This document shows, piece by piece, positions 420 to 40,750 of a stretch of 64,000 nucleotides of DNA (its first letter is position 1; every line of letters begins with the position of its first letter). The stretch lies in NCBI RefSeq assembly GCF_036321535.1, contig NC_087445.1, forward strand, positions 46,748,001 through 46,812,000, in the 5' to 3' direction. This DNA comes from Camelus dromedarius. Lineage: Eukaryota. The notes beneath the pieces were generated by a model. That model saw only the letters and a list, made by a program, of their open reading frames with translations, searched no databases and was not told the origin of the DNA. The position numbers and the translations under genes are program-made.

Positions 420-3400
420 CTGTGCAGCTGCCTCGGTGAAGCCACAGAGCGCCTTGGAGGCTGTGGCGATGGCCTCCCCAAACTCTGGCAGATTTCCGTT
501 CTTGGCATTTTGGGAGATGCCAGTCATGGCCTCACCCAGCACCTGAGGAACAGAGGGTATCAGGAGAGTCAGATCCTTCCTCAGAGGGGTAGGGCAGCCC
601 CTAGTTAGTTTCCTCTTCCTGCCCTCTGCCCTCCTGGATTCCTGGCTACACCTACCTTTGAGTTTTCCATGACACTGTCCAGGCAGCCAAAGTAGGACAT
701 GTCATTGATGGGCTGGACTGGGTTCTCTAGGAGTTCCCGGACTGTCTGTGTAGGGCGGGGGTTGACGTGAGATCCGAGACATCCCTTCACCCCAAACCCA
801 GAACACCTTCCTCAACCTCAACCCCATTTGGCCTGCCAGAGCCTACCTCCAATTCCCGCAGGGCATTGTCACACTCTTTCTGGCCTGGCGCCTGCTGGGT
901 GCACATGGTGATGAGCTGGTTGATGCTGTCGGTCACTGCCCTGGGAGGAAAAGGAAGTCAAGTGAATGGGTGCCTAGGTCATCATTTCTGCATCCTGTAC
1001 ACATGGGAAGTCTCCAGCTGTTTCTCTTTTGTCTATAATTACTCCTAAGCCAGGGACTTCTCATGAAATTCCCCCTCCTCAATCTCTTCAACATTCTAGG
1101 GCTGGGCTTCCTAGCTTCTGCTTACCGGGCAGCTGCAGCCAGCTGACTCTTGAGGTTGGGGGAAGCAGGGTCTGTGGACAGGGCCTTAGCGGCCAGAAGA
1201 AGTTTGCTTGAAGACATGGAGATGCCCTTCAAGTTGGACACGACCTGGGCACGGTCCTCCTGGCTCTGTTGTAGGTGAGAAGGTCAACACATTGTCCGAT
1301 CCTTTCTTATTTGTCTCTAAAAGGGGCCTCTGTCCCAGACACTCAAGTACTGCTAGAGACTGGGGAGGGGAGGGAGCCAGGGGCCGGACAGGACTCCATG
1401 GTCACACAGATGCCTCCAGTCTGACCCGTGAACTACACCCTGTGCCTCTTCATACCGGAGCCTGTCCTGCNNNNNNNNNNNNNNNNNNNNNNNNNNNNNN
1501 NNNNNNNNNNNNNNNNNNNNNNNNNNNNNNNNNNNNNNNNNNNNNNNNNNNNNNNNNNNNNNNNNNNNNNNNNNNNNNNNNNNNNNNNNNNNNNNNNNNN
1601 NNNNNNNNNNGCCGGCTCTGAGCTTCTTGAAAAGTCCCAGTGCTGGGGGGAAGCTGCATGGTCAGAGGGGAAGTCAGGTGTAAGAATGGGAAAGGATGTG
1701 AGGGAGAGTCTGGTAAAGGAGGGCTGGTAGGTGTGCGCAGAGCCTGGGCTCAGTGAAGGGGGGTACATCTGGGAAGTTGGGGTCAAGGAGAGGTCCAGAA
1801 GTAGGAGGAGGAGCTTGGAATTCTTCATCCCCTAGGTTCCCCCCTCACCCCGCCCCTCTACCGAGTCACTTAGGAGTCGCTTGCTGGCATCTCCCACTGC
1901 TCTCAGGGCATTGTCCACATCGCGCTGGCCAGGCAGGCAGCTGACACAACGGTTCAGGGCCTGGGTCACTGCTTTGGCCACCTGAGGTAGGAAAGGAGAT
2001 GGGGGTTGCCAAAACGGAAATAGTTGGGAGATCCCCTCCTCCACTCATGGGACATGGGAGCCTCTGAAAGTGAAAGCAGAAAGGGGGGGTGTTGTAGCTG
2101 AACAGGCTGCAGTCAGGGTATCAAGTGATGGTGTCCAAACTTCCCCAAATGTGGTGTTTAGCGCAGCCCCTTCCTCAGTCTAGCTGAGACGCTTATACTA
2201 AGACTGAGAGAAGGAAGGGTAGAATCCAGAGAGGAGCTGTCACTGCAGATGAGATTCTCTCCAGGCAGGGTGGGCCTTCTGCTGGGATCTGGGAGAGAGG
2301 GTGTAAGTGGCCCCGTCCCAATACCTGACCTGGGCAAGCCTCTGCTGGCTCTCAGGGTCCCCCGGATGGCCAGCTGCCTTTTTCGCCTCCTCGATGAGGC
2401 TGCTGGCCTTGTCCAGTACATCACTCGCTGTGTCGAGCACGATGGCTTGCACCGCAGGGTCTGATGTCAGGGCAGCTACACCCCTGGCAGCTTGGGCCAA
2501 GGACCGCAGCCCACCTGCCACATCTCGAGCTGCAATACCTGGGGTAGGAGACGAGGAGAGAGGAAGGAAGGGAGAAGGTACCCTCACCGTCAGGCCTTGA
2601 TGCTGGCTGTTTCCTGTCAGCCCCATCCCTTACCCAGCTCCTATTCCCCCATCCTCCTCACCACATGCCCCATTCCTGGCCCTGCCCACGTACCTGCATA
2701 ATTCTCATTGCCCTGGGCAACCTCTCCCAGGAGCTGGGCGATTGCGGAGCTCACTGCTTTGGTGCTGTTGCCCAGGTCCTGGGCACATTTCTCCATCTAG
2801 AGATGAAGGGGGAGACTCAGGGGCACAGATGCAGAAGGAATGGGGAAGATGGAACTTGAGAAGCTACTTGGGGACAGCTGGCAGTTTAAGTGATGTTCTG
2901 GGCAGCTCTGGGGCACAGGTGGGAAGGAAGACTTCAGGGTTTGAGTAAGAATGAGGTCTTATGAATACGTACTGTCTCCCCAGGTAGGGGTTTCAGCTTG
3001 CCATCTCGAGCTGCTGCCTTCACTTCCTGCAGGTCTCTCTCTAGATTCTGGACCACACTCAGAGCAGAATCCATCTCCAAAGGCCCACATGCTTCCTGAG
3101 CCTACAAAGATATGGGGTTTGAGGTGTAGGAGGTACAGCTGTATCTCACTGATGCCTCAGGTTGCACAGTTATCCACTTTAGGGTATTCTGCACAGATGC
3201 TCCATGACCCCAGGGCTCCACTCTCAACTTCCAAAGCAGCGAGTCAGCTCCCATACCTTCTGGGCAGCGGTACGGAGTTCAGCCAATGCGGTGCCAAGGT
3301 TTTTAGCACACTGACTCAGCTGCATGGCCGAAGCCTGGTCCTGAATTGTTGGCACGGAGGCCTTCGCAGCTGCCACCATCTTCCCACCTGGCTGTTGGGG

Positions 3401-6400
3401 AACAGGAGGGTAGATGAAGCGTATCTTATGCCCTCACTGGAGCTCAGTACTGGGGAAGAGGCTATTGGCAGAGAGTTAATCTGATTAAATATTAGAGGTC
3501 TTAGAAGAGTGGGAAGGGCCTGGGCTGAGACGTGGGCGGAGGATGCCTTGCCTGCAGGAAGCTCTGGCTGGCAGCAATGAGGGCTAGCTGAGCACTGGGA
3601 CTGTCAGGCTGGGCTTGGCTCCCTCGGACGCCCTGCACCAGCAGTGGAATCTGCTCTGCCACAGCCTGTAGGTGAAAATGTTATAAGAGCCACTTCCCCA
3701 CAGACTGGGGGAAAGTCCCCCTCCTCCCACACTTCCTCCCGCCCCCGTACACTTCCTGGAGTCTCACCTTGCAGCTCTGCACCAGCAGGGGCTGGGGACC
3801 AGCAGAGGCCTTGGGGGTGGAGGCTGCATGTTGGGCCGCAGCGATGGTCTGTGTAGCTGAGGCTGCAGCCTGCTTGGCTGCGTGCTTTAAGGACAGAATA
3901 GTGATGACCAGCCCCAGGCATTCCTGTACCCTGTCCCTGGCTTATCCTGCCCACACTATCCCTCAAAGAAATATTAACGGATGCTCTCTCCGCACGTCCT
4001 TCCCGGTTTCCTTCCTCCCACAGCACCTACACTGCTGTATTTCCCAGCCTCACCTCCAGGCGCTGCACGAGCTTTTTCTTGATGGCATTCTGCGCAGCTG
4101 CATTGGTCGCCATGCGGAGACCCTCAGCTGCCTCCCGCAGCCTCTGCTGCTGCTCCTCACTGTCAGGGTGGGCGGCTGCTCCCTGAGAGGTGGCGAGAGG
4201 GACAGTTATCACCCAGCATCCCTGTGGACCCTAAATAAGCTTTTCTCTGACCCCTCCAGACTCAGACTTATTTTCCTGAAGTCACTTCTATCCCCACTGG
4301 AAGGTAATCATGGCTGGGATGAGTTGCCTGAAATGGGCAAGTGGGGAGCCTCAGGAGGCCCTGGCTTCCCTTTGGGATGCTGAAATCCCTTCCTTAGGTG
4401 GAATTATTCCTGCTTCCCCTTTTTGGGGAAGAGGCCATGTTTCTTCTCCTACTCCCCAAAACATACCACCAACAAATGGGGGTGAGCAGGGCTCCCTGGG
4501 ACAAGGAGGATGCAGTTTACAGCAGGGATCTCAGGGATACCAAAGCAGGGGCCCTGGTGACTCCTGCAAACTGAAGAGCCCCCAAGCCCAGGGGCATCTT
4601 CCTGACAGTCTTCTGCACCCTTACACCCCTATGGCCCATTGCTTTGTCTTTCTCTGTTCTGCTAGCAGCAGACCCCTGGAACTGAAAGCCTATGTGCTTT
4701 CACAGGAGACCAGGAAGCAGAGGGATCCAGGAAGCAGGCAAGTGGTGGCAGCAGAGTAGGGAAGAGGGAATAGCAGGCCTCGGACTTAGAAGAAGAAAAA
4801 GGTACAGTTTCCTGTCAGTGAGGACTCTGGGAGTCACACTGGCTGGAAGCCTGGCACCATCCACCACCGCCTAGGGGAGCATGTACTTCCTCAGTGCTCC
4901 TATGTTTGTTCTTCTGTATCTTCTGCTTTTCCTGAGTCCCTCCCATCAGACGAGGATGACCCATCTGGACCTTTCTGCTTCCCTGCAGGGCCCGGTCTGG
5001 GGGTCTGCACAGAAGGATCTGTACCTTGGCAGCCTCCACCATCTTGGCTGTGGCATCGGCCAGGATCTTGGCGGCGCTTAATAGCTTGCGGGAATTCTCC
5101 AGGTCACTCTCCCCCTCAGCATCAGCCTTGATGGCATTGACCAGGTCAGAGGTGGCTTGGGCTAGGATGCGGGCCTGTCGCACCATCTCACCTGGGAGCA
5201 CAGGCACAGTCAGGGAAGGAAGCCAGAGACACTGAGGGTGTCAGGAGTTGGGGAAGACAAGGCAGACAGGGCTTGTGGGGACAGTAAGGAGACATGAAAG
5301 TTCTCTGAGTGATTTCCCTGGAGTTATTATTTTCTGAGTTTAGGCTCTCAGAAAGGAATAAATTTCCTGGTGGGCTTTGATGAAGGGAAAGACAGTCTCC
5401 AGTGGGTATTTTCAGCAGTCTTGAGAGGATGAGAATCTTTGTGAAGGATTTGGGGGGTGAGGGAGTGGGGTGGGCATGGCAGTCTCTTAATAATGCCTCT
5501 TTCCATCTATTTTTGTGTATACTTTGGTATGTTTTTTAAATGCACCAAAGAAGGCAGAGATTATATTCCTGCTTTGCAGATGGGGAACCAGAAGTTTCAG
5601 AGATTAAACACCCAGCATACTGGGCCTCGAGGAACCTCACTGGGGTTCTCTGTCTTCTTGAAAGGGTGGGGGCTGTCCTTACCAGCATCACCCATGGAGC
5701 TAAAGATGTTCTCGGTGACAGTGAGGATGGTGTCAGTGGCCTGGTCATAACGGCCAGCAGGCCCAGCCCCTGTGGCGTGGGCCCTCACATGCTGCAGCAG
5801 CTCATTCAGGGCCTGCGTGACGGCTGTGGCTGCCGCTCCTACCCCCCGCAACAGCTGCCCATCTTCTGTGGCTGCCTGGGAGGCGGACACACAGCCTTCC
5901 ACGGCTTTGGCCACAAGTCGTCCGGCTTCCACCAGTTGCTCTTGGCAAACGGGGGAGCTGATTGTAGGTGCCACCACCTGTGGGCAAACTGAGTTTCAGA
6001 GATGTAGGCGAGAGAAATGAGTTGTGAGGTGAAGTGTTTGTGGCGTTCACAGTAGTTGTTAGGCTGCGGAGTGAGGCCTCCGGGGTCAAAGAAATGAAGT
6101 GAGAAGCTCTTGTGTCCGTGGTAGCAACACCACTCGGCACAGGCTGGAGAAGCTTTCGGGGCTCACCTTGGTACAGGCCACCAGCTGGGAGGTGGACAGG
6201 GCACACTGTGTTGCTGCAGCAATAACCTGGGTCTGAAGCCCCGAGTCCTCGGTCCGCTGGGCCACACTCTTGGCCTTGAGGACCAGGGCAGCTGCAGCAC
6301 TTGCCACGGCCTTGGCTAGTTGCATGAGCACGTCCTGTGAGAAAACAGCAGTCAGCATGGCCTGGAATCGGGATTGGGCCTGGGATCCATGGACCCTTCT

Positions 6401-9400
6401 CGGACGCATAAGCTGTTTCATTATTCCCACTGACTCCAATCACAGAGCAGTATGTACAGAGCAACCAGAACCTACCCCAAGCCCCTGCCTCGAGCACCGA
6501 GTAGGACAGAACCTACACCGAGGAACAAACCCACACCAAGAGAAACAGAGCCTACACCAAAGGGAGAAATGCGTGAGGCGGATACACTCGGACCGCGCTG
6601 GGGAGGGAGGGCAGCGCTGTTACAATGGGATGGAGGGAGGAGGTACCTCTTGGGGTCCCGCCTACCCCCTCAGCTTCTTTTCTCCATTTCTTCTCAATCT
6701 TGGTTGGAAACAGTCACCCTGGAGTCTTGAGAACAAGTCCCTGTACTACTCTCCACAACCCCATTTTCTCAAGTCCTGCCTGTGGCTGCCTCCCCAGCTC
6801 CTGGCATGTTCTGCTCCCCCAGGGGGACAGGGGAGGGGGCAGAAGCGAGTGTATGCGGCTCAGAGAGAACAAAGCTGGGAAGGCCCAGGCCAGAGGCCGT
6901 TACCGTGGGGGGATCGGGGGGAGATCGAACCCCAGCCCCTCTGGGTGCACATATCTGTGTAGGAAATCCAGGATGACAAGTCAGCTGAGGAAACTGAGGG
7001 ATCAAGATGCCCTCAAGTTAGGGTGAGGGCTACATATGGGGAAGACAGAGAAAGAGGACAGGCAGCTAAAAAATATCACCAATAAGGGCCAAGGGTAAAC
7101 TAGTTGGTTAAGTTTGGATTCAGGGTTTCTGAATTCTCATCCCCAAAAAAGGGACTAGAGGTTCCCAGTGTCATCTCCTGGAAACAGAGGTTCAGGATGG
7201 TCTGAGGGGTCAATTTATAGTAGCAGGACTAGGAGCTGGATTCAGGATCAGAGACTACCTCCTAGAAACTGGGGTTCTGGGGGTTGGGTAAGTCACCAAC
7301 CTGGAAGTGGGGGTCAGTATCGCTTTCCCCAATTTGCTGCAACAGCTCCCCACTGGCCTGGCCCACGTTCCCAGCTGCTTGCAGCAGGTTCTGACGGGGC
7401 TGTGGAGAGTGGACACCAGTCAGAAGCTGCCCAGTCCCTACCCATGGGTCCTACATGCCCGTGGGTCTCACACTCCCATCACGCAACTTGGACTGGCCTC
7501 TCCTCCTTGGGCTTGAACCCGCTCTCCTCCCTAGTGCCAGCCCCATGGGCCCTGACCTCAGCGCTGGCCGGCTGGGCACTGCGCAGCAGTTCTGACACTG
7601 CCCCCGCCAGGCCCTTGGCTGCCTGCAGCAGGGGCCGGCCACTGCTGCCCTCGTCCTCCAGCAGGGCAGCCAGAAGCTTCACGCCGCGGGACATCTCCGT
7701 CAGGTTGGAGGAGATTGTGGTGACTGCACAGCCAACTGCAGTATAGTCTGTCTCTGCAGGGTCCCCTGGGGGAGGAGGAGGAAGAGGAGCAAGTGTGAGG
7801 GACAGAGCAGGCTAGACGGGGGGCTGGGAGGAGCACAGTCATAGGCAGTTAGTCACACACATGTCCTGAGTGAGACGTACACACACAGTCCCTTCCATGA
7901 GTCAAGGTGCAGTCACACTGAGCGTCACACTCATGCTTGCACACGCTCACCTTCCGCTTCCCCCACATGCCCCCAAAGTTTGGCATCGGCCTACCTGCTG
8001 TCAGGTTCACCACGGAGGCAGTACCAGCTGTGATGGCGTCTACCTGGGAGTGGATTTCATGCTTTGATTCATCCATCTTGTTCTTACGCCAGGCCTTCGA
8101 GGCCTGAGAGAAAGAGAAACAAACCTCAGGGTCCCTTCTGCTCCAGTCAACCCAACCCTGTTCCATGGAGTCCCAGCTGCAGTACTGTCGGCCTGTCCTC
8201 CATCCCATACTCACAGCATCCTGGCCCAGAGGGGGCAGAGTGTCAAAGTCATCCAGAGTGGCCTGGGCAGCCTGCACAGCCTGCATGCTGGAGTTGATAG
8301 TTCCAGTGAGCGCCTGCTGGGCTGACGTCTACCAGACAGAGGAGGAACAGGGAACACTTAGAGGAAAGAGAAGGTAAAAGAGAGCCTGGGCCCAAGGAGC
8401 AGAATACACACAGGGACATGGGAAAAGACTGCCAACTCCTGGCTAGGCCCAGCCGAGTGGGGGCCATGGGGGCGCTCTTACCAGAGGAGGCATGTGTCCT
8501 CGGTGCATCTGGCCACTGGTAATCTGCTGCTGGGCAGGTGGCATGCTGCCCACCTGGAAATTCTCAGGACCAGAGGCTCCAGAGCGCATGATGGCAGGCA
8601 GGGCCACGGAGCCGTGCTCCACCTTCCCCACCCGGTTATACTGCTGCTGAAGGACCGTTGACCTAGAGAGGGGACGTATTGGGAGCACTCCAAGGACTGC
8701 CTCCTCCTGTCCCCTTCCCTCCCTGCTCTACCACCTCTGCAGGCCCTGTGGTCTGGGGGTGCGTGAGGTCACATTACAGCCTGCGACTAGGTAAAGAACC
8801 ATCCTGAGGACTCCCCACCCCTCACACTCCTTGGAGTCATGCCTTGCCTTCCCTGCCCCAGAGGGATGAGGTCAGCCCAGCTCTACTTCCTACTTTTTGG
8901 GGGAGACCGAGTCCTCCAGCATAGTAGACTCCTCATCTCCCTCCAGTCCAAAGTGATCCTTGCTTTTTTTCTGTAGGGAGAAAAAAAGAACAAGAGTTAA
9001 AGAAGAGGGAAGTGGAAAACAGCCTCTTCTTTCCCCAGTCAGCCACTCTCCAGAACCTGGATTCCCATTTCTAAAGGATTGGCTTGGGGAGAAGGAGAAG
9101 GCGAGGCAGGCAGTGCTCACCTTCTTAAGGATGATATCGATGTAGCCAGCAATGAGCTGTGCAATCTGCTCCCCCTCGGTCGTCTGTACTGAGTAGTAGC
9201 CATCCTGGTAGTCCCCAAAATCCTAGGGGGACAAGGTGGGGGTTCAGTGGGAAAGCCTGAATCCACCCAGGACAGAAAAGGGCGGGGTGGGTGCCCAAGG
9301 CTGGGCTGATGAGGGTGGCCTCCCACGCCAAGGAAGAAGTCTACCTTTCTTCAATCTCCTAATTCTTTATTTTTCTTGAAGGGAAATACTTTATTTTCAA

Positions 9401-12400
9401 GCAGTGATCTTTATGCTACACAGTTTCAAATAAGCCATTTAGGAAATCTCTCTTCTCTCACCCTGATAATAAAATTGGAAGGACATATTTTTCATTAATG
9501 ATCACAGTTGAGGATTAGCATTAGTATCCAAAAGGGGAAACCACCTTTACAGATTTCTCTTTCTCAGTGGGGCACTTCCTCAAGGTGGGATCAGTTTTCA
9601 ATTTATAAAACCAAAACACAAAGCCAGAGGGGGGAACTACCATAAGTAGCTGCTGCTGAAAGAGGGGAGGCTTATTTTTCTTTCTATCTCTTTTTTCCTT
9701 CCCTCTCCCCAAGATTCCTGTGATCTCAGCTTGCTGGTTAGTTTTGTTCTGTTGATTTTAAAGAATGTTTCATTTAAGTTACCCTCATTCTCCAGGAGAA
9801 AATTTCTCCTCTATTCTAACCTCCAGGTTCCTGCAATAGTTCCAAAGTTCTCCTTTTTACTGGAGCCACATTCAGCGCACCTACCCGTGGAGGAGGGGAA
9901 GACCTCTGCAGCTGCCCTGTCTCAAAACTCCAAAGCCCTTTCTCCCTGAGCACCCCCCGCTCACCAGGGTGAAGCTCTTGGGAGAGGCAGCCCAGCGTTT
10001 GATGTTTGTGAGGTTCCATTCCTGGATCACCTCTTTGGTCTTCTCATCCACTCGCATCACACACTCCTTAGTGATGCCCAGAAGCCTGGGCACCAGCTTG
10101 TTTTTTCCTTTCATCTTTTCCTGTGAGGTAGAGGCCGTCGCTGGTGTTACTGGTCAGGGGATCAGATCTAGACCACAGAGGGGTGCTGAGATGGGCAGGA
10201 GAGCTAAACCAGGGTGTGTCTCTGGATGGACCTAGGACAAGGCCATGCTAGGATAAAGGGAAAGGGAGGGAAAACGCAGGATAGGGAGGGGAGTGGTGGT
10301 GGAGGACTGACAACCAGGCAAGTTTTCACAAGGAAGAGAATGGGACTCATCGGGAACGATGGGAAATGTGACCAAGGGCAGGGTCAGAGACCTTCGGAGA
10401 GGAAAGGGAAAGAGCGGAAATAAGAGAGGGCAGGGAAAAGGGTCCATGACTCACCTTAACCAGGAAGAAGGAGACGCCGTACGTCTTGAGGGAACGGGCT
10501 AGCTTCACGTAGCGTACCTTGGCCTCGATCTCACTCATCTGTCCACAGTTCTTGTGTGCCTTCAAATATGAAATGGGTAAAGGTTTGGCAAAATGTGGGA
10601 AGAATGATATCAAAGACGAAGAGTTAAGATGGGATGTCAACTATAATGGGAGAATATTACGGGAACATGGAAAGGTTAGGGAGTGCAGGCTATGAGAAAT
10701 GAGAGGGTGCCGGGACGGGGCTGACAAGGGCTCTGCAGAAGCAAGGATTCAAGAAGCGAGGGATGTAGTTAAGGAACTTGCAGACATTCTGGAGACATGA
10801 ATGGACAGGTAGGAAGTGGAAGGTCAAATAGAAGGCCTCTTGGGCTGAGGATTCAGAGTGGGGATAACACCTTCCGTTTGTACAAAGATATACCCCTCAC
10901 AGTGATTTCAGGTGTGCTATCTCATTTGACCCCCTATCAACCCTACGCAGTGCAGGTATCATTATCCCATGTTAGAGATAAAGAGAAGAAAACAAGAATA
11001 TTGAACTGAATTCCACAGCATATGCAGTGATGCAGCTGAGACTAGAAGCCCAGGTCTTCTGCTTTCTTGGCACAGGAGAGGTGGGGGAACAGCCTGGCAG
11101 GCAGAAGCGGGGTAGGGGTGACAGTGAGGGGGCGGGGTCCATTTAGTCAGCAGGATTAAACAACAAAGTTCCCGGGTCATCCCAAACACCTGCCCCTATC
11201 CCCATTCACCTGGAAGATTTTACGCTCTCCCTTCTGCTTCACATACTCCTTGGGCAGGAAGTCCTTCAGGCTACACCAGAAAAGGGAGGGTCAGCATGTA
11301 GCGGACAGCATCAGGGACATGTGGGCCATGGACTGTGGGTCTAGGGGGTGAGGAAGTGTCTAGGACAGTGTTACACAGTGTTATCTTTGGGGAGAAGGAA
11401 GACTCAAGGAAACAGAGCCTGGAATGCCCTGTAATCAAGATGACTTAGCATTTGCTCTTGAATGCAGCCTGTGTCTCTCCCTGCAGGGAAACAGACTGAG
11501 GGAACTTGACTTGGAGGCTCATTCCCTGAGGAAAAAAGGGTCTCGAGCACGATTTCAGGGAACCAAGATCAGAAGGAGCTCACTAGAGGGACAACCATGC
11601 TTGTAAGAAGCTGAGAAAGCCACACCAAACTCTACGTATTCTGAGAAATACCAGTGGATGAGACCTGTGAGATTTTTGAGATCTGATGTTCCCTGTGATG
11701 AAAATGGACCCTGTTTCCCTCTGGCTACCATGGTAAAATTCTTCAGAGAATCTCAAAAAAATTAAATGCTTATTTCAGAGGTAGGGGGCAGGAGCAGGGA
11801 ATCTGAAAGACATTGATATTCCACATGGGGCCAGGGAGGAGACAAATGGATGATGGACACTGAAAAGGTACCCATGTGGGTCAGACCCTGGTACCTTGAA
11901 AGAGGAAATAAGGGAAGGCCTGGGATGGAGACAGGCCCTCTGGGGTCACAATGGGAGGGAGTCCTGAGCCCTGACAGGGCACAGAATGGGGGTCACTCAC
12001 TCAAGGAAGCCGGCTTTGTGCTTCTGCTCATTGTGGGGCCCAAACTGGATCTGGCATTGGAAGCCAGCAAATTCACAGGCCTTGTCGAAGGAGACAGGGT
12101 GGGAGCCATTCAGGATGTCGTCTCGTGCCTTGGGAGCACAGCGAAAGAAGGCCAGTGTTGTGGGGGGTGCAGGGATACTCCTCAGTGTGCTTCTGCCCCT
12201 CCTCACCCCCCTCACCCCAGGCAAGTCCTTTGCACACCTGCACATAAAGAAGGTTAAGCTGGACAGGGTCCCGGGAGTCCACATTCTGGTCTGAGTAGAA
12301 GAACTTCCTCCGGAGCAGAAGCGTCTCGTGCTCCTCCACTCCCTGTTCCCTCAGTGTCCGGCCATGGTCCAGCCAGTTCACTGGGACACAGAGAGTCCCC

Positions 12401-13750
12401 TCAGTGTCAAACCCCCCCACCCCGGCCCCTGCGCCATCTAGCCTCTGGCTTTTTGTTTATTTCCCACCTTCTCTCACTAATATGTAAGTTCCGTGAGTGT
12501 ACGGTTTTATTACTGATGCACCCCAGTGTTTGCCAGTGCCTGGTAAAAGCAAGCGCTCTACAAATAATGCACAAACTGCTGCCCCTGCCACCCTAATTGT
12601 TTCTAATGCCCTCTCCTGTTCATTTCTGCTTACACTCATCATCTGTGTGCAATTTCTGCTTCAGTTTCTCCATCTTCTTTTCATCTCGCAGCAGTGTCTT
12701 GTCCTTTCGTAAGGTCCCTGTCACCTCCTCCTTTTTCTCCTCCATGAGCTCTCGAACCAGAGAGTATTCATCATGGTTGGTGATGCCTGGGGTAGAGGGG
12801 TGGATGGGTTGGCAGCATCCCAGACACCGCACTCACTTCCTCTGGCAGAGCTTGGGCCTCCCTGCCAAGCCTTCAGCCCTGCCAGCCCCTTACCAATGCG
12901 GGCACAGATGGTCATGAGCATGTCGGTGACAGTCTTAGAGTCATCTACCATGACAGTCTTCACAGTGCCGTCCAGCATACGGATCTTCAAGGGCCTCTGT
13001 TTCTTCCTGTACTCCATGGTGTCCTGTTGGGGCAAGAATAGAAGGTAGGGGCCCACTTTAAACTAAAGCTATTACTTCCCTTTTAAGCAGCCACAAGGGA
13101 GAAAAGTAGATTACTAAAAGGAAGACTATGGTGGCTCACTTGAAAGCTACGACTGCCTGGAGTGGAAAGAAAGCATGGGAGAGGTCAGAGACAACAGATG
13201 TGGGTGCTGAAAACAGGAGGAGGAAGGGGGGAAGTGACGGGAGAAGATGTTGGTGGTCCTTGATGAAGTGATACTCACCCCATTTCGGAGCATGTAGTAA
13301 TCCAAAGCTTTCCCGGCCTCCAGCCATATACCCTTTTTGGGGTCATCATCTGACAGAAATAGCCCAAAGTCGCTGGCTGAAAGAGAGGATGGATCATCTC
13401 AGACTTATAGGGGCCCTAATGTGGCTGAGTGGCTGTACCATTACCCCTTATTATTTCCCCAGTGGCCCTGGGCCTAAAGGGGAGAGAGGGAACCAAGAAG
13501 CACAGACCTGAGGGATGAGTAGCCTTGGGGGACAACAGGGTGATTTCCCAAGGCCAAAAGCCTGGGGATGAGAAAGGACCAAGGAACTCCCGCCCCAGCC
13601 ACCTGGGCAGTCTGACTCACGGGGGCCAGCCAGGGCCTCTGGGATCCGCTCACGGATGATGCGACAGGCGTCGTACACCATGGTGGACGGCTCGAACTGC
13701 ATCGTCTTCACCACATTCCCAATGCTGATCTTCAGCGAAAGTGCAACCAT
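420..13750 (-). CDS. TLN1: Talin-1, coding exons 2-33 (FERM head and N-terminal part of the rod); gene continues beyond the left edge
   Basis: Starts MVALSLKISIGNVVKTMQFEPS (ATG 13750, GCCACCATGG context). Exons in transcript order: 13621-13750, 13279-13376, 12894-13023, 12634-12786, 12238-12380, 12001-12128, 11210-11270, 10455-10559, 9965-10120, 9121-9222, 8894-8970, 8482-8662, 8215-8328, 7995-8103, 7557-7765, 7301-7399, 6167-6334, 5683-5977, 5025-5191, 4054-4182, 3768-3884, 3552-3665, 3257-3391, 2973-3101, 2694-2796, 2330-2538, 1862-1981, 1456-1653 (part N), 1126-1265, 847-940, 656-745, 420-542. Phases join into one frame; all GT-AG except one GC-AG. Confidence 0.99.
1471..1610. other. N run (140 nt) inside TLN1 exon 29
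   Basis: Both flanks are coding and in frame; exon totals 198 nt = 66 codons as in talin-1. Confidence 0.95.
6904..6954 (-). CDS. TLN1: TLN1 alternative cassette exon 17b, 17 aa ICAPRGAGVRSPPDPPT
   Basis: 51 nt, CAG acceptor (6955-6957), ACG|GTAACG donor, phase 0/0, no stop. Summed upstream CDS is 1995 nt, so insertion follows Gln665, matching the human exon 17b as I recall it. Confidence 0.9.
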
Positions 13751-24332: not shown

Positions 24333-34760
<10,428 letters not shown>

Positions 34761-35796: not shown

Positions 35797-38700
35797 ATGA
35801 TTGAAGTGGTAGCGGAGCTGAGCAGAGGTCCTGTGTTTCTGGCGGGGGAGGCGCTGGAGTGTGTGGTGACTGTCACCAACCCCCTGCCTCCCACTGCCAC
35901 TTCTGCATCAAGGTGGGAATGCTGGTACTGAAAAAGGTGGTCCTTCTGGGAGGAAGCCTGGTGTCTATAGTGCTGAGCCAGAGCTCAGATTGTCCTGTGG
36001 CTACATCACCACTTTCTTGCTCATTGTGCTCTCATTGTAGGAAAGGGCTATTTAACAGATGTGGGTGACATAGCCCCCCACTCTCCTTTCCTCTCTCCTC
36101 CCCCATTCTGCCTTTTACCCTCAAGGTACGTATCTTTGTTTAATGGTTTGTCTTTGGGGTTCTGGATTCTCTGATCCCGAAGACCGCCACCTCACTGTGT
36201 TGGTCTTCTCAGACAGTGTGGTAGAGTGTGTGGGAGAGCATTTGTGAAGTCAGGAACTCTCTTCTGATGTCCGCTTTTCCTCCTCTCATAGCGAGGCTCT
36301 GGCCTGGGCCAGTGCCCAAATCCACTGCCAGTTCCATGCCAGTGAGAGTCGAGTAGCACTGCCTCCCCCAGACTCCAGTCAGCCAGATGTCCAGCCTGAG
36401 AGCCAGACTGTCTTCCTACCACACCGAGGTTAGAAATGGGACATTTGGAGGGGTTTGGAATCATTGCTAGCCAAGGGTGAAGTTGTCAAATTGTTCTGGA
36501 GGGTCGTTATGGTCTCTGTCCCATTGGGGATGTGGGGGAGTGTAATTGTTGCTTTAGGGGCATAAAACTGTTCCTATCTCACAATAAAAAAAGATGAGTA
36601 GCTTAGTTTGGGTTGCCCTTTGTTGGCAGTGCTTACTGCCCCCACTAGCTGTGCCAGCCTACTCCAGTACTAGACAATGGGATCATTAAATTGCAGTCTT
36701 TCTTATCTTTTTTAGGTGAGAGGGGTCAGTGTATCCTTTCCACTCCACCAAAAATCCTGTTCTGTGACCTGAGGCTAGACCCTGGAGAGTCCAAATCATG
36801 TGAGTGACTGCTCCTGACCCCTGGATTGCCTTCTAAGGCTCCTGGAGGGAGGACTTCTCTGGCTGCTTCTNNNNNNNNNNNNNNNNNNNNNNNNNNNNNN
36901 NNNNNNNNNNNNNNNNNNNNNNNNNNNNNNNNNNNNNNNNNNNNNNNNNNNNNNNNNNNNNNNNNNNNNNNNNNNNNNNNNNNNNNNNNNNNNNNNNNNN
37001 NNNNNNNNNNCTTTACTCAGGGTCCCTCTGAGGGTTCTTGTGCTGACTGGTAAGTAAGGGTTCTGGGAACGAAGTGCAGGGGAAGAGCCTCCCCCAAGCA
37101 GAAATGACCTTTAGAGGGCTAGTGAAGGGCTGGAGGGAAGCTTCCTGGTCTTAGTGAAGGTGTGAGGGAGTTGGGGAGAGAGGGTTCTGGAGAATAGATG
37201 AGATGTGTACCTCGGCCATGGCTTCCCTTACCATTTCAGCCCTCTTAGGAGGGAGTCTAAAACCCTAATCTCTACTCTTTTTGCTGTTCCCTCTCACTAC
37301 CTCTCCACTCATTCTCTTTCTAGGCCTTCAAGATGTCCGGTTTCCCCAGGATGAGGCTGTAGCCCCATCCAGTCCATTCTTGGAGGAGGATGAAGGTGGG
37401 AAGAAGGATTCATGGCTTGCTGAGCTCGCTGGGGAGCGCCTCATGGCTGCCACATCGTGTCGCAGCCTCCGTGAGAATCTTTTCAGAATTGCCCCTCCCC
37501 ATCCTTCCCTCACAGTATTCCTGTCTTGGAGACAGATTCTCCTAACTGATACGTATTTCTGAGGATCTACCGATATCTCACCCCAGATTGAAAAGAAAAG
37601 CCCCACCTTTTGGCCTATGGCTTCTAGCCTAAGACATTCCCCAGCGTGGACTCCAGGCTAACAGTGTCCCATTCTCCCCAGATCTGTATAATATCAGTGA
37701 TGGCCGAGGAAAAGTTGGGACATTTGGCATCTTCAAATCTGTATACAGACTCGGCGAGGACGTGGTGGGGACCTTAAACTTAGGGGAAGGAACTGTAGCT
37801 TGTTTGCAGGTAAGAAGGGAGAGTGGCTTTTGAGGAATGAGGCCTGGAAGGAGAGGGCCTGCATAAAGAGGGCTGGGATGTAGAAGTGGGTAGTGGGGTC
37901 CCTTGGAGTCCCTCTGGTAAGCCAGCTTTGATGTTGGGGTGCCCTCTCACCTGGAGTCAGCACTTCCCAGTGCCTGCTAACACATATTTCTCTCCCAGTT
38001 TTCAGTAAGCTTACAGACCGAGGAGCAGGTACAGCCTGAGTACCAGCGGCGCCGCGGGGCAGGGGGTGCCCCCTCTGTGTCTCATGTCACTCATGCCCGG
38101 CACCAGGAGTCCTGCCTCCATACAACCAGAACCAGCTTCTCCCTCCCCATCCCTCTCAGCTCCACCCCAGGCTTCTGCACAGCCGTTGGTGAGCCCCTGA
38201 CCATTACTTGGGGTGGGGTTGAGGGGAGTGAAATGCTGTGTTTACATAGAGTATAATAATGGACTGATTCCTAACACACTCTAGACATACCCACACTAGG
38301 CCCACGACCCTTAACATTCTCTCAGACCTTCAGCCTGTTTCCTAGGTGCGCTGACACCCACACTCTTTAACAGCTTTGCAGATCTTCCCTACCCCCTCCA
38401 CTGGGACACTGTGATGCACTGATCTCTGATTCCCGAGCTTGTTTACTTCAAGCTACCAAGTACTGACTGTCCCACACTTGGGTTATTAGGCGTTTGCTGC
38501 TGCTATCTTATCGTCACATTTCCCATTAGCACACTAAATTTCTTCAGAGAAACCGTTGTTCCTAGCTCCGCCCCATGACCTCTCCCCCTCTTTCTGAATA
38601 CAAGTTTTTGTTTGTTTGTTTGTTTTTTCATTTACTAACCACATTAGCTTTTACTCCTGGATTCTAATGCTTCTAACTCTGCCTTTATCCTTTTTTCCAC

Positions 38701-40563: not shown

Positions 40564-40750
40564 NNNNNNNNNNNNNNNNNNNNNNNNNNNNNNNNNNNNN
40601 NNNNNNNNNNNNNNNNNNNNNNNNNNNNNNNNNNNNNNNNNNNNNNNNNNNNNNNNNNNNNNNNNNNNNNNNNNNNNNNNNNNNNNNNNNNNNNNNNNNN
40701 NNNNNNNNNNNNNNNNNNNNNNNNNNNNNNNNNNNNNNNNNNNNNNNNNN
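40564..40750. other. N run (187 nt) upstream of MSMP
   Basis: Not within any exon of the five recognised genes. Confidence 0.95.

What the first reader, a model, noticed from the sequence alone, without database searches (positions are those of the whole stretch)
6904..6954. Intact talin-1 cassette exon 17b in an apparently non-primate mammal
Seen: clean 51-nt in-frame exon (ICAPRGAGVRSPPDPPT) with canonical splice sites in intron 17, inserting right after Gln665 between rod domains R1 and R2. Established (from memory): a 51-nt exon 17b at this position was described in human as a previously unannotated, cancer-enriched exon that lowers the force needed to open R1-R2 and raises vinculin binding. 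Preserved length, phase and near-identical peptide argue it is an old, selected mechanosensitivity switch, likely missing from this species' annotation. The two differences from my recollection of the human peptide are Ser to Pro.
Basis: partly seen in the sequence, partly recalled or inferred. Interest (0 to 1): 0.7.

Follow-up and report, generated by a model that had tools for sequence, protein, structure and literature searches.

The report
Talin-1 exon 17b, ordinary ortholog
The 51-base stretch is the real counterpart of the known talin-1 cassette exon 17b, but this exon is already annotated in many mammals, birds, reptiles and amphibians, so finding it intact here is expected rather than new.

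Summary
Observation confirmed. On the minus strand, 6954..6904 is a 51-nt open exon (ICAPRGAGVRSPPDPPT). It is flanked by AG and GTAACG. It lies between TLN1 exon 17 (7399..7301, residues 633-665, ends at Gln665) and exon 18 (6334..6167), in phase 0.

The shape alone is not above chance: the 966-nt intron holds 52 AG/open/GT candidates, five of them exactly 51 nt. Orthology is what identifies this one.

- The same 51-nt exon with the same splice sites is present in ten other genomic TLN1 loci: sheep, elephant, dunnart, echidna, chicken, lizard and four unnamed.
- 126 of the talin-1 proteins I fetched carry a 17-residue insert right after Gln665. They include horse and dugong (peptide identical to this one), whales, sheep, mouse, marsupials, birds, reptiles and amphibians.
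- Uninterrupted (spliced) contigs that include the exon exist for mouse and sheep.

The exon is therefore old (tetrapod-wide) and already widely annotated.

Within mammals pN/pS is about 1, so selection acts on length, frame and RNA elements more than on the peptide.

By-product: two conserved intron islands downstream of the exon pair into a long-range RNA stem kept from mammals to birds.

The parts
7301..7399 (-). TLN1 exon 17 (talin-1 residues 633-665, ends with Gln665; donor GTTGGT)
   Evidence: 33/33 identical to PDB 6R9T residues 633-665 and to 1SJ8.
6955..6990 (-). Acceptor region of exon 17b: interrupted pyrimidine tract plus AG. The block CTGACTTGTCATCCTGGATTTCC is conserved in placentals, and the GGATT(T)CCCATG(C/T)AG core is shared with birds.
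6904..6954 (-). Cassette exon 17b: 51 nt, phase 0-0, encodes ICAPRGAGVRSPPDPPT
   Evidence: Orthologous 51-nt exons with AG/GT in 10 other genomic loci. Annotated 17-aa inserts.
6904..6924 (-). C-rich 3' half of the exon (two C6 runs in TCTCCCCCCGATCCCCCCACG), conserved at all codon positions. Candidate poly-C (PCBP1-type) element; this is an inference.
   Evidence: Sequence. Conservation irrespective of codon position. PCBP1/SMAD3 dependence of 17b skipping in human cells (paper).
6898..6903 (-). Weak donor of 17b: ACG|GTAACG, with no G at +5. The weakness is conserved (GTAACG/GTAATG in therians, GTAAAG in echidna and lizard, GTAAAA in birds).
6846..6862 (-). Proximal arm of a conserved long-range intronic RNA stem (5'-TGAGCCGCATACACTCG), 42-58 nt after the 17b donor
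   Evidence: the repeat finder (I2); RNAalifold; arm table.
6574..6590 (-). Distal arm of the same stem (5'-CGAGTGTATCCGCCTCA), 255 nt further 3'
   Evidence: It is the most conserved element of the distal intron, down to marsupial, monotreme and birds.
6495..6558 (-). GU-rich tandem repeats of about 21 nt (TTGGTGTAGG-type) directly 3' of the distal arm. Candidate intronic splicing enhancer; this is an inference.
   Evidence: TRF; alignment.
6167..6334 (-). TLN1 exon 18 (starts Asp666, DVLMQLAK...; donor GTGAGC at 6166).

Best explanation
Window 6954..6904 (minus strand) is this species' ortholog of the known TLN1 cassette exon 17b.

When the exon is included, it adds 17 proline/serine/glycine-rich residues directly after Gln665, at the start of the first helix of rod bundle R2. 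Together with residues 658-665, the insert forms a disordered linker of about 23 residues between R1 and R2. In human talin-1 this loosens the R1-R2 packing, lowers the force needed to unfold both bundles, and changes vinculin binding and adhesion dynamics. That effect was shown experimentally for human and is inferred here.

The exon is alternative because both of its splice sites are weak and kept weak. Inclusion is probably set by conserved RNA elements: a C-rich tract inside the exon, a conserved 80 nt just after the donor, and a long-range intronic stem that would bring a GU-rich repeat close to the donor. The roles of these elements are inferred.

The exon is not lineage-specific. It is a tetrapod-wide module of fixed length that is already widely annotated.
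For: Position, phase and splice sites:
-.

Orthology at DNA level:
- The exon is 51 nt with AG/GT in sheep, elephant, dunnart, echidna, chicken, lizard and four unnamed loci.
- The 111-nt core is 91-95% identical where the rest of the intron is 73-89%.
- Invariant columns in six placentals: exon 0.73 and the next 80 nt 0.79, against 0.38-0.42 for the rest of the intron.

Protein models:
- 126 of the fetched talin-1 proteins have a 17-aa insert exactly after ...DP[HR]FQ, giving 53 distinct peptides. Kept positions are I/M1, R5 (49 of 53), D/E14 (48), P15 (43) and T17 (49).
- Horse and dugong have the identical peptide.

Expression elsewhere:
- The mouse 2558-aa form is encoded without interruption on at least 24 assembled contigs of 5-20 kb.
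- The sheep form is on an 8142-nt contig whose exon equals the sheep genomic exon.
- A skipping-form cDNA contig also exists, L011.

Fold:
- AlphaFold2 model of R1-R2 with the identical insert (dugong row, 20-sequence alignment).
- It shows nine helices, with pLDDT below 50 and no secondary structure over model residues 177-198.
- R1 helix 5 ends at model residue 176 and R2 helix 1 starts at 200.

Human function:
- (force figures and insert site).
Against: - The RNA runs that hold the region also hold the intron words, which says nothing about splicing.
- I fetched no human 17b sequence, so identity with the human exon rests on intron, length, phase, insertion site and the chain of mammalian models.
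- Within mammals pN/pS is about 0.97 with no third-position excess. A codon-level signature of protein selection is therefore absent in this small sample.
- The mechanical effect has been measured only for the human insert.
Confidence: 0.9

Rival explanations
1. The block is a conserved intronic RNA regulatory element, and the peptide is a passenger. Selection preserves nucleotide sequence, length and frame, so that inclusion is harmless or simply adds a spacer. It does not preserve any residue-specific function of the 17 amino acids.
For: - pN/pS is about 1 in mammals, and variable sites fall evenly on codon positions.
- The flanking intron is as conserved as the exon or more so.
- The C-rich tract is conserved at all codon positions.
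- The insert is predicted to be disordered.
Against: - Length is fixed at 17 codons from salamander and caecilians to mammals, while the surrounding intron has many indels.
- R5, D/E14, P15 and T17 persist across about 350 My although mammal and bird exons share only 25-28 of 51 bases.
- Spliced transcripts exist.
- This rival concerns what is selected, not whether the exon is real.
Confidence: 0.3
2. The exon is intact in this species but no longer used. It would be a silent relic kept by the short time since loss, or by the overlapping RNA elements.
For: No inclusion evidence for this species could be obtained.
Against: - Both splice sites, the frame, the flanks and both stem arms are identical or nearly identical to those of species where the exon is annotated or seen in transcripts.
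- The peptide is identical to that of horse and dugong.
Confidence: 0.05
3. It is a chance pseudo-exon: an open 51-nt stretch that happens to sit between an AG and a GT.
For: Such patterns are common. There are 52 candidates in this intron, five of them 51 nt.
Against: Only this candidate is conserved in position, length and sequence across all loci examined, and it matches the annotated isoforms.
Confidence: 0.01

Closest known systems
Human TLN1 exon 17b (Gallego-Paez et al. 2023, J Cell Biol, PMC9997659; ENST00000706939, UniProt A0A1S5UZ07)
   Same: It lies in the intron between exons 17 and 18, is 51 nt, and gives an in-frame 17-residue insert directly after Gln665 at the start of R2 helix 1. 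The insert is predicted to be unstructured.
   Different: Different species. The residue-level comparison with the human peptide was not made here. Tissue pattern, TGF-beta/SMAD3/PCBP1 control and the force effect are known only for human.
RefSeq/UniProt 'talin-1 isoform X1' models of 2558 aa (e.g. horse A0A9L0SC76, sheep XP_042099198.1, mouse XP_006537833.1, elephant XP_049751268.1, right whale XP_061056252.1)
   Same: Same insert site and length. The horse and dugong peptides are identical to this one, and the whale peptide differs at one residue.
   Different: None of substance. These models show that the exon is already annotated in many non-primate mammals.
CD44 variable-exon switch in epithelial-mesenchymal transition (SMAD3-PCBP1; ESRP1 versus hnRNPM on GU-rich intron motifs). 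Recalled from memory, except that the 17b paper cites the SMAD3/PCBP1 data set.
   Same: Works-like only. The exon is included at baseline and skipped after TGF-beta/EGF through SMAD3 and PCBP1. Here there is a C-rich tract in the exon and GU-rich repeats downstream.
   Different: No binding of any factor to these elements has been shown. The motif assignment is inference.
'RNA bridges': conserved long-range intronic stems that bring distal splicing-factor sites next to alternative exons (described for RBFOX targets; recalled from memory)
   Same: Two conserved complementary intron segments lie 186-476 nt apart just downstream of a regulated cassette exon, with a repeat motif next to the distal arm.
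   Different: No UGCAUG motif is involved. Function is untested. The duplex energy in mammals is not exceptional for this GC-rich intron.

Membership tests
TLN1 cassette exon 17b | Lies in the TLN1 intron between exon 17 (ending Gln665) and exon 18 (starting Asp666) | tested here: met
   the flanking exons match talin-1 residues 633-665, and the next large exon matches 6R9T positions 723-819. The protein start MVALSLK... is at about 13750.
TLN1 cassette exon 17b | 51 nt, phase 0-0, no stop, canonical AG...GT | tested here: met
TLN1 cassette exon 17b | Orthologous to the exon annotated at this site in other mammals | tested here: met
   DNA alignments; annotated inserts.
TLN1 cassette exon 17b | Sequence alignment to the human exon itself (chr9:35718356-35718406) | not tested
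   No human 17b sequence was fetched, and the paper text held here does not print the peptide. Inferred from site, length and the mammalian series.
TLN1 cassette exon 17b | Included in mature mRNA of this species as an alternative (cassette) exon | not testable with these tools
Inclusion is shown for mouse and sheep and skipping by the L011 cDNA.
TLN1 cassette exon 17b | Insert extends the R1-R2 linker as a mostly unstructured segment and shortens R2 helix 1 | tested here: met
   AlphaFold2 on R1-R2 with the identical insert (dugong row): no secondary structure and pLDDT below 50 at model residues 177-198, and helices on either side are intact. This is a prediction, not a measurement.
TLN1 cassette exon 17b | Lowers R1/R2 unfolding force and alters vinculin binding | not testable with these tools
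   Known from human recombinant protein only.
Conserved long-range intronic RNA stem ('RNA bridge' type) | Two complementary segments conserved across species, with changes that keep pairing | tested here: met
   - The repeat finder finds the pair independently in camel, elephant, rodent-like L018, dunnart, echidna, chicken and bird L014.
- RNAalifold recovers 15 pairs.
- G-C changes to A-U in both birds and U-A to C-G in echidna.
- There are wobble-compatible one-sided changes in sheep and birds.
- Breaks are few.
- The lizard has a different-sequence stem at the matching place.
Conserved long-range intronic RNA stem ('RNA bridge' type) | Stability above background, and an effect on splicing | tested here: inconclusive
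   - Duplex dG is about -20 kcal/mol in placentals and echidna (-16 in sheep). That falls in the best 1.5-17% of window pairs of the same intron.
- Dunnart, birds and lizard fall in the best 0.1-0.2%.

The most novel reading that the evidence does not exclude
Exon 17b is an ancient, fixed-length (17-codon) linker module of talin-1 kept across tetrapods. Length-variable counterparts may exist at the same site in ray-finned fishes.

Its regulated inclusion may depend on a conserved long-range RNA stem in the downstream intron (window 6862..6846 pairing with 6590..6574). The stem would place a GU-rich repeat next to the weak donor. Neither the depth of conservation nor this RNA structure appears in the papers I could search.
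Probability: 0.5. Interest if true: 0.5.

Novelty: already known. Interest (0 to 1): 0.25.

Why it matters
For the finding as given, little. It confirms that a published and widely annotated alternative exon is intact in one more mammal.

Two by-products could be useful to talin and splicing researchers.

First, the cassette is not a primate or cancer curiosity. It is a tetrapod-wide module with a fixed length. This suggests that what is selected is a two-state R1-R2 linker (short or long), more than the exact peptide.

Second, the exon comes with a conserved set of RNA elements that can be tested in a minigene:
- weak splice sites;
- a C-rich exon half;
- a conserved block after the donor;
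- a stem kept from mammals to birds;
- GU-rich repeats.

These give concrete handles on how the switch is regulated, which the 2023 paper says is largely unknown.

Tried and rejected
Queries from this exon stopped at 6239, and protein searches were scored on regions that end before the matching residues.
- tblastn with the camel peptide against the bird locus L014 gave only a weak off-target hit, and I first thought birds lacked the exon. That was wrong. The annotated bird peptides led to the true 51-nt exon at L014:587-637.
- An alignment of an amphioxus talin with 23 short window exon translations was misaligned by MAFFT and was abandoned. The spliced contig L011 served as a long query instead.
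- TLN2 of the same genome (G000:C5): intron 17 (3867 nt) has no convincing counterpart. There was no significant tblastn hit. None of the TLN1 flank motifs is present. The single pattern match (VDYLRVWSLCVKKTELKT) lacks a donor and sits in AT-rich sequence. I did not search for annotated TLN2 isoforms with an insert.
This is weak evidence because the seeds are recalled and four N runs are masked.
- Alligator genomic DNA: no record for that exact protein.
- The bacterial promoter/terminator scan is irrelevant for a mammalian intron. It only pointed to a small hairpin.
Full report
**What is in the window.** On the minus strand the sequence reads ...tttcctacacAG | ATATGTGCACCC...CCCCCCACG | GTAACGgcc.
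- The 51 bases 6954..6904 translate without a stop to ICAPRGAGVRSPPDPPT.
- The exon upstream, 7399..7301, encodes PRQNLLQAAGNVGQASGELLQQIGESDTDPHFQ. This is identical to residues 633-665 of full-length talin-1 in PDB 6R9T and to 1SJ8.
- The exon downstream starts at 6334 with DVLMQLAK and ends at 6167 before GTGAGC.
- The next large exon (5977..5684) matches talin-1 structures at E 7e-55.
- The talin start MVALSLKISIGNVVK lies near 13750.

The gene is therefore TLN1, the intron is intron 17, and the candidate exon is in phase 0 on both sides, directly after Gln665.

**Is the pattern more than chance?** By itself, no.
- The 966-nt intron contains 52 stretches of the form AG, open frame of 27-99 nt in the right phase, GT. 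Five of them are exactly 51 nt.
- The case rests on comparison with other species.

**DNA comparison.** I collected genomic TLN1 loci through proteins of the neighbouring exon and through annotated isoforms.
- The 51-nt exon with AG and GT is present in all ten other genomic loci examined: sheep, elephant, a dunnart, echidna, chicken, a wall lizard, a second bird (L014) and three unnamed mammals (L006, L007, L018 group).
- The rodent-like L018 group aligns to this window at 73% over the intron but at 91-92% over the 111 nt centred on the exon.
- In six placentals the fraction of invariant columns is 0.73 for the exon, 0.79 for the 80 nt after it and 0.53 for the 60 nt before it. The rest of the intron is at 0.38-0.42.
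- One low-coverage metagenome contig (L009) has TT instead of GT at the donor. Its sister contigs from the same study have GT.

**Annotated proteins.** A spliced TLN1 contig (L011) gave a query long enough to reach full-length talins. A second search centred on the insert returned many 'talin-1 isoform X1' models.
- Of the talin-1 proteins fetched, 126 have a 17-residue insert exactly between ...DP[HR]FQ and D/E-x-LMQLAK, and 118 have none.

Peptides by group:

| Group | Peptide |
|---|---|
| Horse, dugong (identical to this window) | ICAPRGAGVRSPPDPPT |
| Whales | ICAPRGAGVPSPPDPPT |
| Sheep | ICAPGGAGFPSPPEPPT |
| Mouse | MCVPRGAGAPSSPDSPT |
| Marsupials | MFAPRGSGVR(L/F)PPDPPT |
| Echidna | MSVRRGSGAPSPPTPPT |
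| Many birds | IPESRRAWILPASDPKT |
| Rattlesnakes | IVESRRLRILSSPDAKT |
| Alligator | IVASRCARTLPTSDPKT |
| Axolotl | ITGTRGTRSILPSDRNT |

- Rabbit, elephant, tenrec, deer, a bat, marmot and ground squirrel differ from the window peptide at one to four residues.
- Frogs have 18 residues.
- A gar, a piranha and a turbot model carry inserts of other lengths at the same site.
- Across 53 distinct 17-mers the kept positions are I/M1, R5 (49), S/P13, D/E14 (48), P15 (43), K/P16 and T17 (49).
- The 2023 paper reports annotation in four primates and Ensembl's view that the exon is constrained in mammals. The public models go much deeper than that, and they show that the exon is routinely annotated outside primates.

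**Expression.** I could not test this species.
- Indirect evidence from other species is good. The mouse 2558-aa protein is encoded without interruption on at least 24 assembled contigs of 5-20 kb from independent runs.
- The sheep isoform is on an 8142-nt contig whose exon is base-for-base the sheep genomic exon.
- The chicken isoform is also carried by contigs of transcript size.
- L011 is a skipping-form transcript.
- Both forms exist, as expected for a cassette exon.

**What is selected.**
- Pairwise Nei-Gojobori counts over eight mammals give pS 0.141 and pN 0.137, a ratio of 0.97. Variable sites fall 5, 6 and 8 on codon positions 1, 2 and 3.
- In mammals the exon is therefore conserved as nucleotide sequence, not specifically as codons.
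- Camel and bird exons share only 25-28 of 51 bases, yet length, frame, splice sites and a handful of residues persist.
- My reading: the strong constraints are the 51-nt length, the open frame and RNA-level splicing elements, with weaker constraint on a few residues.
- The donor is weak and stays weak: ACG|GTAACG here, GTAATG in sheep and dunnart, GTAAAG in echidna and lizard, GTAAAA in birds. None has G at +5.
- The 3' half of the exon is two C6 runs. The paper shows that TGF-beta/EGF-induced skipping needs SMAD3 and the poly-C binding protein PCBP1. A PCBP1 site in the exon would explain conservation at all codon positions, but this is inference.

**Protein consequence.** I ran AlphaFold2 on R1-R2 (residues 482-807 with insert). 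The first row was dugong, whose insert is identical to this window's, in an alignment of 20 vertebrate sequences.
- The model has nine helices and a mean pLDDT of 79.
- There is no secondary structure and pLDDT is below 50 over model residues 177-198. This covers talin residues 658-665 plus most of the insert.
- R1 helix 5 ends at model residue 176 and R2 helix 1 starts at 200.
- This agrees with the published human model: an unstructured, lengthened R1-R2 linker and a shortened first R2 helix.
- The mechanical consequence is taken from the human experiments and is not tested here. Unfolding peaks of R2 and R1 fell to about 13 and 21 pN, and cells expressing the 17b form had altered adhesions.

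**By-product: a conserved long-range RNA stem.** The two most conserved intron islands downstream of the exon are complementary.
- The arms are 6862..6846 (5'-TGAGCCGCATACACTCG) and 6590..6574 (5'-CGAGTGTATCCGCCTCA). They are 255 nt apart and form 15 of 17 pairs.
- The repeat finder finds the same pair independently in elephant, the L018 group, dunnart, echidna, chicken and bird L014.
- On an alignment of the whole interval from ten species, RNAalifold closes the interval with this stem.
- Of 15 pairs, six never vary.
- One pair is G-C in mammals and A-U in both birds.
- One pair is U-A in most mammals and dunnart, U-G in L006 and C-G in echidna.
- Four pairs show one-sided changes that keep pairing (sheep C-G to U-G and U-A to U-G; birds A-U to G-U and C-G to U-G).
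- Three pairs break in some species.
- The lizard lacks the sequence motif. Its strongest inverted repeat (21 nt, 86%, L041:9062-9082 with 9387-9407) sits at the matching place and shares the ATGC..TCGG / CCGA..GCAT core.
- Caveats apply. Duplex energy in placentals and echidna (about -20 kcal/mol, -16 in sheep) is only in the best 1.5-17% of window pairs of the same GC-rich intron. Dunnart, birds and lizard are in the best 0.1-0.2%. The species are few and related.
- Directly 3' of the distal arm lie GU-rich repeats of about 21 nt (6558..6495). The stem would bring them to within about 60 nt of the weak donor.
- I found no paper on this. Genome-wide catalogues of such structures may list it.

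**Paralog.** TLN2 of the same genome shows no counterpart in its 3.9-kb intron 17. I did not search TLN2 annotations, so the age relative to the TLN1/TLN2 split stays open.

**Species.**
- Intron identity is highest to L007 (0.90, whale-type peptide) and sheep (0.83), then a bat-like locus and elephant (0.80).
- Earlier agents of this scan call the genome camel. My data fit an artiodactyl but do not name it.

**Verdict.** The claim of age is right and understated. The hint of novelty or missing annotation is not supported. As a finding it is ordinary. The tetrapod-wide fixed length and the conserved RNA stem are modest new leads.

Noticed in passing
window 6846-6862 and 6574-6590 (minus strand); also L039:7460-7476/7731-7747, L040:9622-9638/9878-9894, L032:9111-9130/9573-9592, L014:774-793/1270-1289: Two conserved intron islands downstream of exon 17b are complementary. 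They form a long-range stem kept from mammals to birds, with some pairing-preserving changes.
   Followed up: yes
window 6495-6558 (minus strand): GU-rich tandem repeats of about 21 nt (TTGGTGTAGG-type), moderately conserved in mammals, directly 3' of the distal stem arm. Possible splicing-enhancer site.
   Followed up: partly
window 6875-6888 (minus strand): Small hairpin CTGGG-CCTT-CCCAG, 15 nt after the 17b donor, inside the block that is invariant in placentals.
   Followed up: no
L011 (metagenome-collection contig ERZ786672 NODE-19, 8394 nt): A spliced, full-length-type TLN1 transcript lacking exon 17b sits in a metagenome assembly. Its protein has DVLMQLAK like this window.
   Followed up: partly
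proteins P0405 (gar), P0414 (piranha), P0413 (turbot), P0401/P0402/P0408/P0380 (frogs): Fish talin-1 models carry inserts of 22, 18 and 11 residues at the same site, and frogs carry 18. The piranha insert starts ISFI, like the caecilian ISAI. The cassette may predate tetrapods.
   Followed up: no
G000:C5:5508279-5512145 (TLN2 intron 17; loci L003-L005): No 17b-like exon was found in the paralog TLN2 of the same genome by peptide, pattern or flank-motif search.
   Followed up: partly
proteins P0434, P0435 (mouse isoforms X1, X2; 2627 and 2610 aa) and P0300 (horse model, 2441 aa): The mouse models carry a 69-residue N-terminal extension. The horse UniProt model with the identical 17b peptide lacks about 117 residues of R1. 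These could be further isoforms or model errors.
   Followed up: no
window 1471-1610, 28534-28665, 36871-37010, 40564-40750: Four N runs of 132-187 bases.
   Followed up: no
L009:132-242: One low-coverage contig of the L007 species shows TT instead of GT at the 17b donor, plus one more exon change. This is either a sequencing error or a polymorphism that would kill the exon.
   Followed up: no
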